From contig CP075496.1 of NCBI GenBank assembly GCA_021613535.1, forward strand, positions 12,586,001 through 12,650,000: DNA of 64,000 nucleotides. Direction: 5' to 3'. Shown piece by piece: positions 19,729-25,239 of this stretch. Positions within the stretch are counted from its first letter, which is position 1, and every line of letters starts with the position of its first letter. Both the position numbers and the translations under genes were made by a program. The notes under the pieces are model-generated. The model was not told the origin of the DNA. It made no database searches and saw nothing but the letters and a program-made list of their open reading frames with translations. Source of the stretch: Adineta vaga (Eukaryota > Animalia > Rotifera).

Positions 19729-20627
19729 ATCAAAATACACAGCAAAAGCACGAAACATTTTTATTTTATTCTATTTTTAGGTATTTAATTTATTGTTCTA
19801 GTTTAATGAATCTTTTTTTGTTGAACATATTATAAAAAATAATATGATCATCAATAAATTAATCATGTCAAATGTCAAACTACCTAGAGAAATGAAAGTG
19901 CAGCAAGTGAGAAAGTGTCATATTTTATTATATGAGATATCTTCTGATATGAAAGGGTACATATAAAGCAATTTTGTCAAATTCAATACTCTTTCTATAG
20001 TAAAATCAATCATGTAAACTAAAGATGTTTTGAAATCACAATATTTCGTCAACTAAACATGATTATTGTGTTTTTTTTTATTTCGAGCTTTTGAATACAT
20101 GATGTTAGAGTCTTGAAAGGTCATTTGGCAGCAGTCCATATTATAGTTTAAGATCAAACAAGAACAACAAATTTTGTAAAGTAGATCATTGAAATTTAAT
20201 ACTTTTTGCAGTCAGTAATAAAAGCAGCAAATACAAGAATTGTAATATCAAAATGTCCGACATCAACTGCTAATACCATTCGTATAGCTAGGATGAGCGT
20301 GGTTATCTCTTTTTTGCCCTCATCCACATCCTTTCTTTTTTCAATATCAAATTCATTCAAAATCGTTTTATCACCACAACTTTCGGGATCAATTTAATAT
20401 CTCTATAGGAAGTAATAACTGAATCGTTAACACGTACAAATCTGTCTCCTACAAGCTAAAAGAAAAAGTGAAATTCCATTCATCATACACACAAATTATA
20501 ACCTAAACATTTGAACAAGAGCGCCTATGAAAACAATAGAAGACAGAAAAAAGAAAAAACACTGTTTCGTTGTTTGAAAAGAAAAAGAAAGAAACAAAAA
20601 TCAATCATCTATAATCGAAAGACTCGA

Positions 20628-22215
20628 TCACATTGGCACAGGTATTAATTCATTTCTTGAAGAAGAAGATTCTGATGTTGAATGAGTTTGTGTTTTGACT
20701 TGACGATGAATGACCATAAGTGTGAATAATAATGGTAAATATATCAGACTATAACGAAAAAGTTTTCTTGATGATTGTGCATCACGTTGACGATAGAATT
20801 TGTAAGAAAGATAGATTAAATAACCATTGACAGGTAATGTATCCAAAGCAAATAACCATGTCGTCATATCAATCGCTGGTGCAATTAATGAACAAGAAAG
20901 AAGTATCATTATTGAATAACGAAGTGATGTTACTAGACATAATCGTTCATGCGATACACACATCATTTTATAACCAGCACGATCATATTCACGTCTGATA
21001 TTCCAACTTAAAGAATTAAAATGTGGAAATTGCCATGCATAGAGTATGAAAGCAAGTAGAAGAGCACCTAGAAACAAATCATGTTGAAAGAAAAAAAAAA
21101 CTAGTAAATTTTATATTCACCTGAATCTATTGAACCAGTACATGCTGTCCAACCCATAACAGGCGGTATTGCTCCAACAATAGATCCTAGCCATGTATTG
21201 ATAATATGTTTGCGTTTCATCGGTGTATAAACACAGGTGTAAAGTAAAAAATTTGATAATCCAAGTAGACCAGTCAATGTATTACAACCTAATGTAAGAA
21301 GAGTTACACCTGAGATCAATGTTACAGTAGCAAAACCAATGGCATGTCGATAACTAAATAGATAAACAACAAAAGATAATCATTTTGAAGAGAAGAATTT
21401 GAGGAAACTCTGTACCTCATTTGACCAAGAACAAGAACACGATTTCGTGTACGTTTCATTTGTGCATCATATGGAATTTCCATCAATTGATTGATTGTGT
21501 TCGCTGAAGCTGATGTTAAAATAGTTCCAAGTGTTACGCATGCAAGCAATGGGATAGAAACTGGTAGAGGTGCAACAACAAAACCGTAAGCAGCAGTAGA
21601 AGCGACAAGAACTAAAGAAAAGTCATAGATTCATTAATAAAAACAAGTAAATACAGTTTTTTTTCTCATACTAGTGAGATTCTTCTTTGACAATCTTGTG
21701 TAATAATCACATAATTGTCTTATTGATACATGAGCATTTTTATTCAAATCTGTTGGAAGTATAGCAACTTCTTGTTCAGTTTCTTTGAATGTGTGTTTTG
21801 CTTCAACATCATCAGTTTTTATCGGCGGATCACAAAAGGGTTGCGATGCAGTCGATGCTGTTGTTGCTGGCGATGTTGTTGATGATGTAAGATCAATAAA
21901 ATTTTTTTCATTTTGTTTCAAAGTTGACGTAGAACTAGCAATCCATTCATCAGAATTTGTTACTTCAGATATTTTTGGACGTGGAACAGAAGCATATTTT
22001 CGACAAAAGACTAGCGATGTCTAAAAAATCAACAAAACAATTGATTAACTCAATATGATTTCGTTCAAATTATTTACAATAGGTGATGATCGAATAATCG
22101 ATGAAGATTGTCGAGAAAAATTTGATGAAAATAAATGAAGAGATTGCGTGCCAATACAATGAATTGTTAGACCATATCGAGGAGCAGCAATACAAGAGAA
22201 TAATAGACGATTCAT
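20628..22215 (-). CDS. COX10: Protoheme IX farnesyltransferase, mitochondrial (heme O synthase)
   Basis: Transit-peptide-like MNRLLFSC.., then [97 protein letters not shown] across short introns. Confidence 0.95.
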
Positions 22216-22326
22216 TCTGAAATTTAGCACATCTAGACACAAGAAAACATCTGACAAAGTGCTTGATTATAATTTAACAAAAAAAAGAACGAAATATAAA
22301 ACAAGAAGACTTTTCTTTTACTATCA

Positions 22327-22563
22327 TTATTCATCATCGAGTAAGGTTAATGCATCTGGTTTATGTGCTGCTTCTGCGCCTGTTTTGTCACTTTTGACAA
22401 GATATTGTGGATCATCTTTGGATGCTTTGACATGATGATCTTTAATTTGTGTCTCTGATGTTAATTTTTTAATAACAACACCTTCAATTGGACCATTCAA
22501 TGAATTCCATTGCACTTTATCACCCTTTTGAAATTCATCTGTCGATACTTTACTAGTTGGCAT
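22327..22563 (-). CDS. DUF2945 / HVA1-like (hypervirulence-associated Tudor-like) small protein, bacterial type
   Basis: Intronless 78-aa ORF: FQKGDKVQWNS..G.IEGVVIKKLTSETQIKDHHVKASKDDPQYLVKSDKTGAEAAHKPDAL, matching the recalled DUF2945 consensus (GD.V.W....G...G.V......IKG..V.AS.D.P.Y.V.SDKTG..A.HKP.AL). Confidence 0.88.
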   Translation of the reverse strand: MPTSKVSTDEFQKGDKVQWNSLNGPIEGVVIKKLTSETQIKDHHVKASKDDPQYLVKSDKTGAEAAHKPDALTLLDDE

Positions 22564-23005
22564 AATGATTAGATTTCACAAAAGTAGAATGTTCAATAAA
22601 AGTTCAAGATAAAGAATTATTCTTTGATTTTCGTTGTTGTTTTTTCTGTGATCAACTCGATATAGACTAAGAAATCTTTATTCTTTCTTTCATTTCATTG
22701 GTTATTTACTATAGTAAAGAATGGATTTCATATGCTAGAATCCATTTGTAGCTGACTAATAATGACATCTATGAAAAAATCAAAATACTACTTTTCGACG
22801 AAATCATCACATGTATAGTTTAGTTAATAGATCGATTAAATAAAAATCGAAACTATTATTTATAATATCTGTTCAAAGCATATATAAAAAAAGAAACGAA
22901 AGATTATTACATGTACACTATATTTAGAATAGATATAGTAGCACAAAAAAGCACGAAGAAAAGTTGGCATATCATCATCGATATAATCTTTGAAATTCAT
23001 TGTTT

Positions 23006-24140
23006 TCAAGAGAGCGAAGATGTCTGTTCGTCATCGTCAGCAGTTTTTAATTCAAGTTTATCAATAGCATTTAAATCTAATGGTGTTGGTAATACTGATG
23101 TTATTGTATTATGAATATTATTTGAATGCGAGTCAGAATGTGTACCAATCATTACTGGAATTTGTAATTCAAAATCAGAAAAAAGTCCTTTTGCTTTAAC
23201 TTCAAATCTAATATCATAATTAACATAAACATATACATCACAACGATTGTCTCGTCCTTCAAAACGATATGATGGTGAAATTCCAATCGGAATTGTAAAT
23301 GGACATGCTGTTTCTACATGTTGTGCGTTGAAATTAACTAATTGAGGAATTGGAACGCGCATGATTTCTAAACGACGTCGCTGTTGTGCAATATCATAAC
23401 GTTGGATGAGACAAATATCAATACGTTTGATTAATAAATGAAGTGGATTGAGAATATCGAGTGTGATGATTGTTGTTTCACCTGGTACAAGAGCAGAATG
23501 TTGAAGAACACCTTTGATTATAACATCATGACGTCTCGTATCAAATTTAACTGAAGAATGAGAATTATTGACATGACGAAGATTTACACGAGGATAAATA
23601 CGTAATGGATAGTGAAGATAAGTATTTGCAACGTACCACTTCTTTTCTACTAATAACTTTTCATAGAAAATTTAAAAAAATGAAATTCATTCGTAAGAAT
23701 TCTATGAATAATTATTTTACCTCTAATTGATAACGGACAAATGGATAATCTTTTGGATGTAATGTCGGTGGGAGAAGATCTGGTAAAAGAATTGAAAATG
23801 GATATGTATAGAGACCTGGTTCAAAAGTTGTCAAATCTGTTGGACCATGTTTAACTTGATGGTGTGGAACAAATATCATTTGACCTAATCTTACTTTTTG
23901 TCGAAGAATACAAATATCATGACGATCCACTACTTGATTTGTTTGTCCATTTTGCATACGATTTTTATGCATTGTAATATAACCAACAGTTCCATTGACA
24001 ATCAAATGAATATCATCCGTTGTCGGTATACTTTCTGAAACAGTACATTGAACTTTACCAGATATAATATCGCCAGAATAGTAAATTATTGGTTGTACTT
24101 GATCAAGTGTAATACTTATGGTCGCATTGTTATTACCCAT
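23006..24140 (-). CDS. Arrestin domain-containing protein (alpha-arrestin like; exons 24140-23721, 23656-23006)
   Basis: YYSGDIISGKV, PGLYTYPFSILLPDLLPPT..VRYQL (arrestin N domain); LVPGETTIITLDILN and VNYDIRFEVKAKGLFSDFELQIPVMIGT (arrestin C domain). Confidence 0.9.
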
Positions 24141-25239
24141 AATTATTATTAAAATATACAAATGAGTTTTTGTTGAAATAAATCAGCTATGTTGATTTGT
24201 TTCTTTAGTCTTGCCATCTGATATTTTGATTAGACGTCGGTATGAAATATCACGTTTGTTAAAAATAACAAAACCGATGACATTCAAGTGAAATTAATAT
24301 GAACCAAAATAAACATGTCGTGAGATATGTTTAGTCAATTATGATGTCAAAGAAAATGTTCGCGATGAAATTATTCCTAAACAAAATTTACATTTCTTTG
24401 ACTACACAACTTCGAATAGATTTGAGCAAGATTTTGACAATAAGAATTAATAACATACATCTTACTTTCAAACTGTTGAATCAATAGATAAGGGAAAAAA
24501 AGTATCTTCATATCAAGGAAGTATTTTTTATGCCAACTAATCTTTTCATTGAAATGAATTTTTTTCTTCTATTAAGAATAAAGTAATTAGGATATTTTTT
24601 TCTTTTTTTAATGTCAATGTTGAATTTTTCTTTTTAAATATTTGTTTGAAGAAAAAGAAAACAAATTTGTTCGTTAAGTAATTCAACCTCTAATGAAAAT
24701 TAGTATATGAAGAAAAGAAAAACAAAATTTTCCTCACTCAATATGTTACAAATATATAAGAATTTTCTCGATAAGATTATTTATACGAGAATTTAATGAA
24801 ACTAAATTTTTCAAATCAACCTTGAGCACCTATTTTTCATACATGATTTTAATTAGTTTTTTTATCTGTCTTACTTTTTTAATTTCATGCACTAGTTAAT
24901 CAATTTTCATAGACAAGAAAAATCAGTGCATATCAAGATATTGGCCTTGATCATCTTTAGTAGTCGTTCTTGATTCTATATCTATAAAACAGAATCAAGG
25001 ACAATTATAGATTTTTAATTACTGATACAATTATCGAACATGTTTGTTTGTTTGTTTGTTTCGATGTTTGAAGAAAAAAACAAGAAGTGATAAAATTATC
25101 GAGTTCGAATTAAAATACTCGGGTATATTATATTATGAAAAAAATATGAATGAAAAATAGATAAATGCACAAGCAAACAAAATTGTTAGGAAATAAATAT
25201 TTTAAATAGAATTACTTAATTTCATCAATTAACTAAAAT

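What the first reader, a model, noticed from the sequence alone, without database searches (positions are those of the whole stretch)
22215..22563. Bacterial-type HVA1/DUF2945 ORF apparently sharing a transcription unit with COX10 (bicistronic mRNA or trans-spliced operon)
Seen: the DUF2945 stop (22327) is only 111 bp upstream of the COX10 ATG (22215) on the same strand. The spacer has no AATAAA or ATTAAA. It is a U-rich tract followed by acceptor-like AGs (gtctag; tttcag one base before the ATG), and a possible GTAAAA donor lies within the stop run. The nearest promoter-like element (CCAAT, about 22697-22701) is upstream of the DUF2945 ORF. Known: spliced-leader trans-splicing has been reported in bdelloid rotifers, and fungal HVA1 (Cryptococcus) has been linked to energy/NADPH metabolism. 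Inference: a foreign gene was domesticated by inserting between the promoter and CDS of an essential heme A biosynthesis gene, giving co-expression or uORF-type control of cytochrome oxidase assembly.
Basis: partly seen in the sequence, partly recalled or inferred. Interest (0 to 1): 0.85.

Follow-up and report, generated by a model that had tools for sequence, protein, structure and literature searches.

The report
Bacterial gene lodged upstream of COX10
A small gene of bacterial origin sits between the promoter and the coding exons of the essential mitochondrial gene COX10 in a bdelloid rotifer. The two probably share one transcription unit that is cut into two separate mRNAs, which would be the first operon-like unit described in rotifers, but no reads prove it yet.

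Summary
A 78-aa Hva1/DUF2945 ORF (22327-22563, minus) ends 111 nt before the COX10 ATG (22215). The spacer has no AATAAA or ATTAAA.

Both genes are expressed. RNA contigs from three studies give separate Hva1 and COX10 contigs. There is no stable bicistronic mRNA and no intron in the spacer.

All three COX10 contigs stop at 22234, on a conserved pyrimidine-tract YAG site. That is the branch point expected if the rotifer spliced leader, which ends in AG, is joined there. SL joining is inferred, not read.

The Hva1-COX10 order is kept in 14 distinct bdelloid loci. In one lineage most of Hva1 was deleted, and COX10 now sits directly behind the same CCAAT promoter block that precedes Hva1 elsewhere.

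Hva1 forms one rotifer clade inside bacterial sequences and is under purifying selection.

A new detail is a 2-codon uORF (ATG-NNN-stop) at the start of the COX10 leader, present in all 14 loci.

Best reading (about 0.5): a foreign gene inserted into the COX10 outron, giving a Ciona-like SL-resolved two-gene operon. Main rival (about 0.35): COX10 has its own compact promoter in the last 50 nt of the spacer.

This scan flagged the same stretch before as an HGT candidate.

The parts
22748..22770 (-). Conserved upstream block (AGATGTCA...TCAG..AC), a likely distal promoter element
   Evidence: Partly invariant across 8 loci in alignment A2; position.
22697..22701 (-). Invariant CCAAT box about 50 nt upstream of the Hva1 RNA 5' end
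   Evidence: Invariant in A2. The same block precedes COX10 directly in the Hva1-deleted locus L036.
22564..22646 (-). Hva1 5'UTR; RNA contigs begin at 22646 (X1) and 22645 (X18)
   Evidence: table 8. No RNA contig that truly lies on the window covers 22661-23302. The only depth there (23089-23195) comes from unrelated contigs that match about 21 nt at 23098-23118 and then run on unlike sequence.
22327..22563 (-). Hva1_TUDOR/DUF2945 CDS: 78 aa, intronless, of bacterial origin
   Evidence: Pfam E 3e-22. Single copy in the genome. Bacterial relatives at 64-78% identity. One rotifer clade, SH-aLRT 96. Median dN/dS 0.18.
22235..22326 (-). Spacer, equal to the Hva1 3'UTR and the proposed COX10 outron end; no canonical poly(A) hexamer
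   Evidence: Hva1-side RNA contigs reach 22226 (X1), 22239 (X16) and 22279 (X18). No AWTAAA here.
22260..22269 (-). Conserved TAATCAAGCA block 20-45 nt upstream of the acceptor; a branch-point candidate, with TATA-like or PAS-like roles not excluded
   Evidence: Present in 13 of 14 loci and retained in the Hva1-deleted locus. Resembles TTAATCAA near the 3' end of COX10 intron 1.
22233..22252 (-). Pyrimidine-rich tract plus YAG: the proposed SL trans-splice acceptor (cut between 22233 and 22232)
   Evidence: AG is invariant in A1. COX10 contigs from X1, X16 and X18 all end at 22234. The SL ends in ...AAGAG.
22224..22232 (-). Two-codon uORF ATG-TGC-TAA, the first bases of COX10 exon 1
   Evidence: ATG-NNN-TAA/TAG is present in all 14 loci with a variable middle codon; it sits 8 nt (9 in L030) before the COX10 ATG.
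22078..22232 (-). COX10 exon 1 (ATG at 22215)
   Evidence: Joints; ORF.
21672..22020 (-). COX10 exon 2
   Evidence: Joints 22020/22078 and 21611/21672, GT..AG on the minus strand, in 4 runs.
21416..21611 (-). COX10 exon 3 (UbiA)
21118..21353 (-). COX10 exon 4 (UbiA)
20366..21064 (-). COX10 exon 5 with the stop at 20628-20630 and the 3'UTR; ATTAAA at 20393-20398; RNA contigs end at 20366

Best explanation
A bacterial DUF2945/Hva1 gene was acquired once by an ancestor of these bdelloid rotifers. It landed in the transcribed leader (outron) of COX10, between the CCAAT-box promoter of COX10 and its spliced-leader acceptor.

Transcription starts near 22646 and runs through Hva1 towards COX10. Each precursor then takes one of two routes. 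It is either ended and polyadenylated close to the acceptor, giving a monocistronic Hva1 mRNA, or trans-spliced to the 22-23-nt SL at 22233|22232. The second route gives a capped COX10 mRNA whose 17-nt genomic leader opens with a conserved 2-codon uORF.

The locus would therefore work like a Ciona-type or C. elegans SL1-type operon with almost no intercistronic DNA.

Shown: the gene identities, the foreign origin, expression of both genes, separate mature RNAs, the four COX10 introns, conservation of the gene order, of the acceptor and of the uORF, and homology of the promoter block.

Inferred: SL addition at this site, the polycistronic precursor, and the absence of a second promoter.
For: (1): spliced COX10 contigs from three studies all end at 22234. 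The SL was recalled from memory, then found 59 times in this genome against 0 for the control, and is followed by a GT donor. It ends in AG, so the SL-joined form and the genomic form diverge exactly at 22234.

(2): a pyrimidine tract plus YAG, followed at once by ATG-NNN-stop, is kept in all 14 loci. The distance from the A/T-rich block to the AG varies from 20 to 45 nt. That variation fits a branch point and 3' splice site better than a TATA box and initiator. An in-frame stop kept after a uAUG matters only if the uAUG is not at the very cap, which again points to added leader sequence.

(3): Hva1-side contigs run through nearly the whole spacer (to 22226 and 22239), so the upstream RNA ends where the downstream RNA begins. 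No AATAAA or ATTAAA is present. Both features are reported for Ciona operons (PMC1488885).

(4): in four metagenome contigs about 230 nt of Hva1 plus spacer are deleted. A 30-nt remnant of the Hva1 CDS remains (26/30 matches, 0 of 2000 shuffles score as high). COX10 now follows the same CCAAT block that precedes Hva1 in a close relative (76% over 116 nt).

(5): no conserved element lies in the variable part of the spacer, and the Hva1 CDS shows no block of synonymous-site constraint.

(6) More than half of bdelloid mRNAs carry the SL (stated in PMC1925144).
Against: No contig bridges the acceptor by 31 nt or more on both sides, and no SL letters were seen on any COX10 contig. Contigs cannot show starts, ends or precursors.

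The Hva1 5' ends agree within 1 nt between two studies and do not fit the SL-branch position. Contig ends can therefore coincide at an ordinary transcription start, and 22234 also fits an initiator-like YYA+1 site.

The conserved 50-nt block before the acceptor could be a compact COX10 promoter. Run X5 shows COX10 but no Hva1 coverage. Operons have not been reported in rotifers (PMC7986045).
Confidence: 0.5

Rival explanations
1. There are two independent transcription units packed tightly together. Hva1 uses the CCAAT promoter. COX10 has its own compact promoter in the conserved last ~50 nt of the spacer, with the A/T-rich TATAAT/AATAAA-like element plus an initiator at the A of the AG, or a start just upstream followed by SL trans-splicing of a very short outron.
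For: TATAAT at 22266-22271 lies 32-37 nt upstream of 22234, and TCTA+1GATG resembles an initiator. This block is the only conserved part of the spacer, and it survives the Hva1 deletion. The contigs show no SL letters and no bridging. The depth ratio of Hva1 to COX10 varies between runs, and X5 has COX10 only.
Against: The spacing from the A/T-rich element to the AG varies from about 20 to 47 nt among loci, and L013 has no TATA-like element at all. A 17-nt leader with a uAUG at +3 from the cap would make the conserved uORF and its stop pointless. The site has the same Y-tract-YAG form as the four COX10 introns. All three studies agree on exactly 22234, whereas the Hva1 start is ragged by 1 nt.
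Confidence: 0.35
2. One stable bicistronic mRNA carries both ORFs, and COX10 is translated by reinitiation or internal entry.
For: Only the short same-strand spacing and the lack of a canonical poly(A) hexamer.
Against: In three studies the abundant COX10 RNA ends at 22234 and the Hva1 RNA forms separate contigs. Nothing bridges the two, although depth is 24-190 on both sides. A 78-codon upstream ORF followed by a second uORF would nearly abolish COX10 translation.
Confidence: 0.04
3. Hva1 is fused to COX10, or supplies its leader, through a cis-spliced intron in the spacer (the GTAAAA donor joined to one of the AGs).
For: GTAAAA at 22316-22321 and AGs at 22233 and 22217.
Against: One search reports the four COX10 introns in up to four runs but no joint anywhere in 22216-22326. 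Contigs read straight through 22226-22464.
Confidence: 0.02
4. The Hva1 ORF is bacterial contamination or an assembly artefact.
For: Bacterial homologs reach 64-78% identity.
Against: The ORF lies inside a 15-Mb chromosome-scale contig, between an arrestin-domain gene and an intron-bearing COX10. The same order appears in independent assemblies and metagenomes. GC is 35%, close to the host's 30.6%, and dN/dS is 0.18. It is expressed together with spliced host RNA.
Confidence: 0.01

Closest known systems
Ciona intestinalis operons without intercistronic DNA, and C. elegans SL1-type operons
   Same: Two same-strand genes. The upstream mRNA ends at or next to the trans-splice acceptor AG of the downstream gene. 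The upstream cistron has no canonical AAUAAA. A single SL serves all genes. Processing of one precursor may be mutually exclusive (PMC1488885).
   Different: Neither the SL junction nor the dicistronic precursor has been read here. One member is a horizontally acquired bacterial gene. The phylum (Rotifera) has no reported operons (PMC7986045). The Hva1 contig in X1 runs 7 nt past the cut site.
C. elegans SL2-type operons
   Same: Short same-strand spacing (about 100 nt between the stop and the next ATG), a U-rich stretch before the acceptor, and a downstream gene with a very short leader.
   Different: This genome shows one dominant SL sequence plus copies that differ by a single base, and no second SL class was looked for. 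The gap between the upstream RNA's 3' end and the acceptor is about 0-45 nt rather than about 100 nt. No canonical PAS is present.
The proposal that SL trans-splicing rescues host genes after a foreign gene inserts into their 5' UTR (Paulinella micropora, PMC6053224)
   Same: The logic is the same: a transferred ORF upstream of a host CDS is tolerated because the SL gives the host CDS a new capped leader. That paper names rotifers as an HGT-rich group that also uses SL trans-splicing.
   Different: Here the inserted gene is itself conserved, expressed and under purifying selection in many species. The arrangement has lasted to saturation of synonymous sites.
Cryptococcus neoformans Hva1 (CNAG_02591, PDB 4P5N) and bacterial DUF2945 proteins
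   Same: The same Pfam family, PF11160. Small proteins of about 70-80 aa. The highly conserved core DPQYLVKSDKTGAEAAHKP is shared with the bacterial members.
   Different: The match to the fungal structure is weak by sequence (E 0.72). The rotifer proteins have a Ser/Lys-rich N-terminus and an acidic C-terminal tail that bacteria lack. The biochemical function is unknown, and the NADPH link is only proposed for the fungus (PMC5008624).

Membership tests
Hva1_TUDOR / DUF2945 (PF11160) | Profile match above the curated cut-off over the whole domain | tested here: met
   78.9 bits against a cut-off of 24.1, E 3e-22, profile positions 1-59 of 59.
Hva1_TUDOR / DUF2945 (PF11160) | Sequence similarity to the solved founding member (4P5N) | tested here: inconclusive
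   phmmer E 0.72, aligned over residues 12-77. No fold was predicted.
COX10 / heme O synthase (UbiA prenyltransferase family) | UbiA profile across the exons, and orthologs named protoheme IX farnesyltransferase | tested here: met
   Three exon ORFs hit PF01040, covering profile positions 22-249. Homologs of exon 5 are named protoheme IX farnesyltransferase / heme O synthase.
Horizontally acquired, domesticated gene of bdelloid rotifers | Nearest non-rotifer relatives are bacterial, and the rotifer copies form one clade | tested here: met
   The tree places the 31 rotifer rows on one branch with SH-aLRT 96 (quick tree, 78 columns).
Horizontally acquired, domesticated gene of bdelloid rotifers | Linked to metazoan intron-bearing genes, expressed, and under purifying selection | tested here: met
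   Flanked by an arrestin-domain gene and COX10. RNA contigs in 3 studies. Median dN/dS 0.18.
SL-resolved operon | Same strand with a very short intergenic distance | tested here: met
   111 nt from stop to ATG; the RNA ends lie within about 0-45 nt of each other.
SL-resolved operon | The downstream cistron carries the spliced leader | tested here: inconclusive
   Contigs end at the predicted SL/genome branch point, 22234, in 3 studies, but no SL letters were seen.
SL-resolved operon | A polycistronic precursor RNA exists | tested here: inconclusive
   No contig bridges by 31 nt or more. The X1 contig crosses the cut site by 7 nt only. Raw reads were not available.
SL-resolved operon | No promoter between the cistrons | tested here: inconclusive
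   Only the acceptor-proximal 50 nt are conserved. The deletion derivative places COX10 behind the shared CCAAT block. A compact promoter in that 50-nt block is not excluded.
Minimal uORF (AUG-codon-stop) | An upstream AUG with an in-frame stop, inside the mature leader, and conserved | tested here: met
   22224-22232 lies inside the RNA contigs. Kept in 14 of 14 loci with 6 sequence variants.
Minimal uORF (AUG-codon-stop) | Ribosome occupancy and an effect on COX10 translation | not testable with these tools
   Needs ribosome profiling or reporter assays.

The most novel reading that the evidence does not exclude
This is the first operon in phylum Rotifera, and it was created by horizontal gene transfer. 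A bacterial ORF dropped into the outron of an essential mitochondrial gene and captured its promoter. SL trans-splicing made the insertion harmless. Precursor processing (3'-end formation at the acceptor versus trans-splicing) now sets the balance between Hva1 and COX10 output, and a conserved 2-codon uORF adds translational control of heme A synthesis.
Probability: 0.4. Interest if true: 0.8.

Novelty: new variant of a known kind. Interest (0 to 1): 0.6.

Why it matters
Bdelloid rotifers carry unusually many foreign genes, and how a promoterless bacterial ORF becomes expressed in an animal nucleus is an open question. This locus offers a concrete, testable route: insertion into the discarded leader of a trans-spliced host gene. 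The foreign ORF would be transcribed at no cost, and the spliced leader would protect the host gene.

The locus would also extend SL-resolved operons to a phylum where none has been reported. A naturally occurring deletion derivative is available for comparison.

Separately, the strictly conserved 2-codon uORF suggests translational control of COX10, the enzyme that commits heme to cytochrome oxidase assembly.

Tried and rejected
1. I looked for RNA contigs joining Hva1 to spliced COX10 in other species through the look-up of encoding contigs. Several contigs of 1.8-3.1 kb had the size expected for a dicistronic RNA (L012, L013, L021, L024, L025-L028). All keep the introns, so they are DNA.

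2. An acceptor at 22217 (tttcag) is rejected: contigs read through it and it is not conserved.

3. A cis-intron from the GTAAAA donor is rejected: there is no joint in the spacer.

4. TAATCMAGCA as a genome-wide signal: only 997 matches against 711 for the control. It is not a general motif, so I treated it as local.

5. I found no ohnolog of COX10 or Hva1 in this genome that could show a pre-insertion state. Both are single copy.

6. I searched for an ancestral empty site. The only Hva1-less loci (L034, L036, L038, L039) turned out to be a secondary deletion with an Hva1 remnant. No locus that is clearly outside this clade was recovered. L041 and the loci below it are too distant to be bdelloid.

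7. I looked for a promoter hidden in the Hva1 CDS. There is no run of constrained synonymous sites.

8. The original SL paper (doi 10.1093/molbev/msi139) is not held. The SL sequence came from memory and was then validated against the genome.

10. Exons were searched one by one. In one search I concatenated the five exons inside a script, only to check that the frame stays open (451 codons). That joined sequence was not sent to any search tool.

Full report
**Setting.** The window is part of a 100.8-Mb genome in six contigs. The closest named proteins are from the bdelloid rotifer Adineta steineri. The local gene order on the minus strand is an arrestin-domain gene, the 78-aa ORF, then COX10. 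A PAPS-reductase-domain gene converges from the plus strand.

- The ORF at 22327-22563 (minus) matches Pfam Hva1_TUDOR/DUF2945 over the full model (E 3e-22).
- COX10 begins at 22215, 111 nt downstream on the same strand.
- The spacer has no AATAAA or ATTAAA on that strand.

**Foreign origin and domestication.**
- The gene is single copy in this genome.
- About thirty rotifer-type proteins of 70-81 aa share a Ser/Lys-rich N-terminus and an acidic tail. The next hits are bacterial DUF2945 proteins at 64-78% identity.
- In a quick ML tree the rotifer rows form one branch (SH-aLRT 96) among bacterial rows. With only 78 columns the donor cannot be named.
- Among rotifer orthologs the median dN/dS is 0.18, and synonymous sites are saturated for the most distant pairs. 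GC is 35% against 30.6% for the window.
- The gene is therefore an old, maintained acquisition. This scan had flagged the same stretch before as an HGT candidate.

**RNA evidence.** Logan contigs of four runs from four studies were laid on 20200-23400. They are spliced, so they derive from RNA.
- COX10 has five exons. Its four introns (53, 62, 60 and 57 nt) all have GT..AG ends.
- In X1, X16 and X18 the COX10 contig ends at exactly 22234.
- Hva1 is covered by separate contigs: 22226-22646 in X1, 22239-22547 in X16 and 22279-22645 in X18.
- No RNA contig that truly lies on the window covers 22661-23302. The only depth there (23089-23195) comes from unrelated contigs that match about 21 nt at 23098-23118 and then run on unlike sequence. 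Hva1 RNA therefore starts near 22646 and is not read-through from the arrestin gene.
- No joint lies in the spacer, and no contig bridges the two genes. The X1 Hva1-side contig crosses the proposed cut site by only 7 nt.
- These results reject a stable bicistronic mRNA and a cis-intron. Contigs cannot prove starts, ends or precursors, and no raw reads were available.

**Is 22234 a spliced-leader acceptor?** I recalled the bdelloid SL from memory and tested it.
- It occurs 59 times in this genome against 0 for the control, often in divergent pairs. It is followed by a GT donor...CCAAGAG|GTAAAT.
- Because it ends in AG, an SL-COX10 mRNA and the genome (...tctAG|atg...) share those two bases and diverge at 22234. 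That is exactly where all three contigs stop.
- The site has a pyrimidine tract and YAG like the four COX10 introns, and the AG is invariant in all loci.
- The distance from the conserved A/T-rich TAATCAAGCA block to the AG varies from 20 to 45 nt. That suits a branch point better than a TATA box.
- More than half of bdelloid mRNAs are reported to carry this SL (PMC1925144).

Three points count against:
- No SL letters are present in any contig.
- The Hva1 5' ends agree within 1 nt between studies without fitting an SL branch, so coincident contig ends can also mark a plain start.
- TCTA+1GATG resembles an initiator.

I put SL use at this site at about 0.8.

**A conserved mini-uORF.** The first nine bases after the AG are ATG-TGC-TAA (22224-22232), 8 nt before the COX10 ATG and out of frame with it.
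- All 14 distinct loci keep ATG-NNN-TAA/TAG. The middle codon varies (TGC, TAC, CTT, TAT, CAT, TGT). The spacing is fixed at 8 nt, or 9 in one locus.
- The bases after the stop vary freely.
- A retained in-frame stop matters only if ribosomes use the uAUG. That in turn requires leader sequence in front of it, which is indirect support for SL addition.

**Synteny and the promoter.** Hva1 followed by COX10 occurs in every locus recovered that still holds an Hva1 ORF. These are three of four A. steineri assemblies plus several unnamed Logan, ENA and JGI contigs, with spacers of 111-210 nt.
- Upstream of Hva1 three elements are conserved: an invariant CCAAT (22697-22701), a block at 22748-22770, and the start region.
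- In most other species a TTCTAG|TCAAT site sits 13-17 nt before the Hva1 ATG and looks like an SL acceptor. It is lost in this window.
- A metagenome scan with the COX10 exon-4 ORF found four contigs from different samples with arrestin followed by COX10 and no Hva1 ORF.
- These are not an ancestral empty site. They keep 30 nt of Hva1 codons 6-16 (26/30 matches; 0 of 2000 shuffles score as high), fused to the conserved spacer block.
- Upstream of that remnant lies the same CCAAT block that precedes Hva1 in the close relative L024 (76% over 116 nt).
- In that lineage a roughly 230-nt deletion removed most of Hva1 and the variable spacer, and left COX10 directly behind the shared promoter block.
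- The Hva1 CDS shows no stretch of constrained synonymous sites that would suggest an embedded promoter.
- The only remaining places for a COX10 promoter are the shared upstream block or the last ~50 nt before the acceptor.

**Mechanism proposed.** Transcription from the CCAAT promoter runs through Hva1 into COX10. The precursor is either ended and polyadenylated close to the acceptor, giving Hva1 mRNA, or trans-spliced, giving SL-COX10 mRNA.
- The upstream RNA ends (22226-22279) abut the acceptor, and the spacer lacks a canonical hexamer. COX10 itself uses ATTAAA 27 nt before its contig end.
- Both features match Ciona operons, which lack intercistronic DNA, mostly lack AAUAAA, and may process each precursor in only one of the two ways (PMC1488885).
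- The idea that SL trans-splicing makes insertions into 5' leaders tolerable, and so favours gene transfer, was proposed for Paulinella with rotifers mentioned (PMC6053224).
- Operons have not been reported in rotifers (PMC7986045).

**Odds.** I put the operon reading at about 0.5 and a separate compact COX10 promoter at about 0.35. The remainder covers a bicistronic mRNA, a rare cis-splice, or an artefact.

**Function of Hva1.** The biochemical role is unknown. The fungal founding member is a small protein whose loss alters the nicotinamide cofactor pool and TCA flux (PMC5008624). The rotifer protein matches that structure only weakly by sequence. A functional tie to COX10 is speculation.

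Noticed in passing
L016:824-2116 and L016:3007-4316: One A. steineri assembly holds two tandem copies (95-98% identical) of a 1.3-kb segment made of the Hva1 promoter, the CDS and the first 79 nt of the spacer. Both copies stop at ...AATAAATAATCA, followed by an N and unrelated sequence, next to a kinase gene. The break falls inside the conserved TAATCAAGCA block. It could be an assembly join or a real breakpoint.
   Followed up: partly
L036:2840-3082 (also L034, L038, L039): A bdelloid lineage lost Hva1 through a deletion of about 230 nt that leaves a 30-nt CDS remnant. The junction lies at GATAA-like microhomology between the CDS and the spacer. COX10 and its mini-uORF stay intact.
   Followed up: yes
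L012, L013, L015, L019, L020, L022: about 13-17 nt before the Hva1 ATG (alignment A2 columns 446-457): A conserved TTCTAG|TCAAT site looks like an SL acceptor for Hva1 in other species. In this window it is degraded to aatctaatc, and the RNA extends 83 nt upstream instead.
   Followed up: partly
G000, e.g. C1:2551160-2551336 and C5:9884356-9925969: The 59 spliced-leader matches mostly lie in divergently oriented pairs about 154 bp apart, in clusters on C2, C5 and C6. Some copies carry single-base variants (C10A, C13A, and others).
   Followed up: partly
L003:1465-1480 and window 22748-22770: AGATGTCA occurs about 30 nt upstream of an SL RNA gene and also in the conserved block upstream of Hva1. 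TGTCAGAT also recurs in the spacers of several species. This may be a shared transcription-factor site.
   Followed up: no
L031:4310-4740: The hits to COX10 exons 3 and 4 lie only 11 nt apart, which suggests that intron 3 is missing in that lineage.
   Followed up: no
L012:700-860: The spacer holds a tandem duplication of about 75 nt that includes the TGTCAGATAATAAYCMAGCA block. This explains its 210-nt length.
   Followed up: no
window 23006-24161 (minus strand): The arrestin-domain gene upstream shows no real coverage in any of the four RNA runs over the part laid (22661-23400), while its neighbours are well covered.
   Followed up: no
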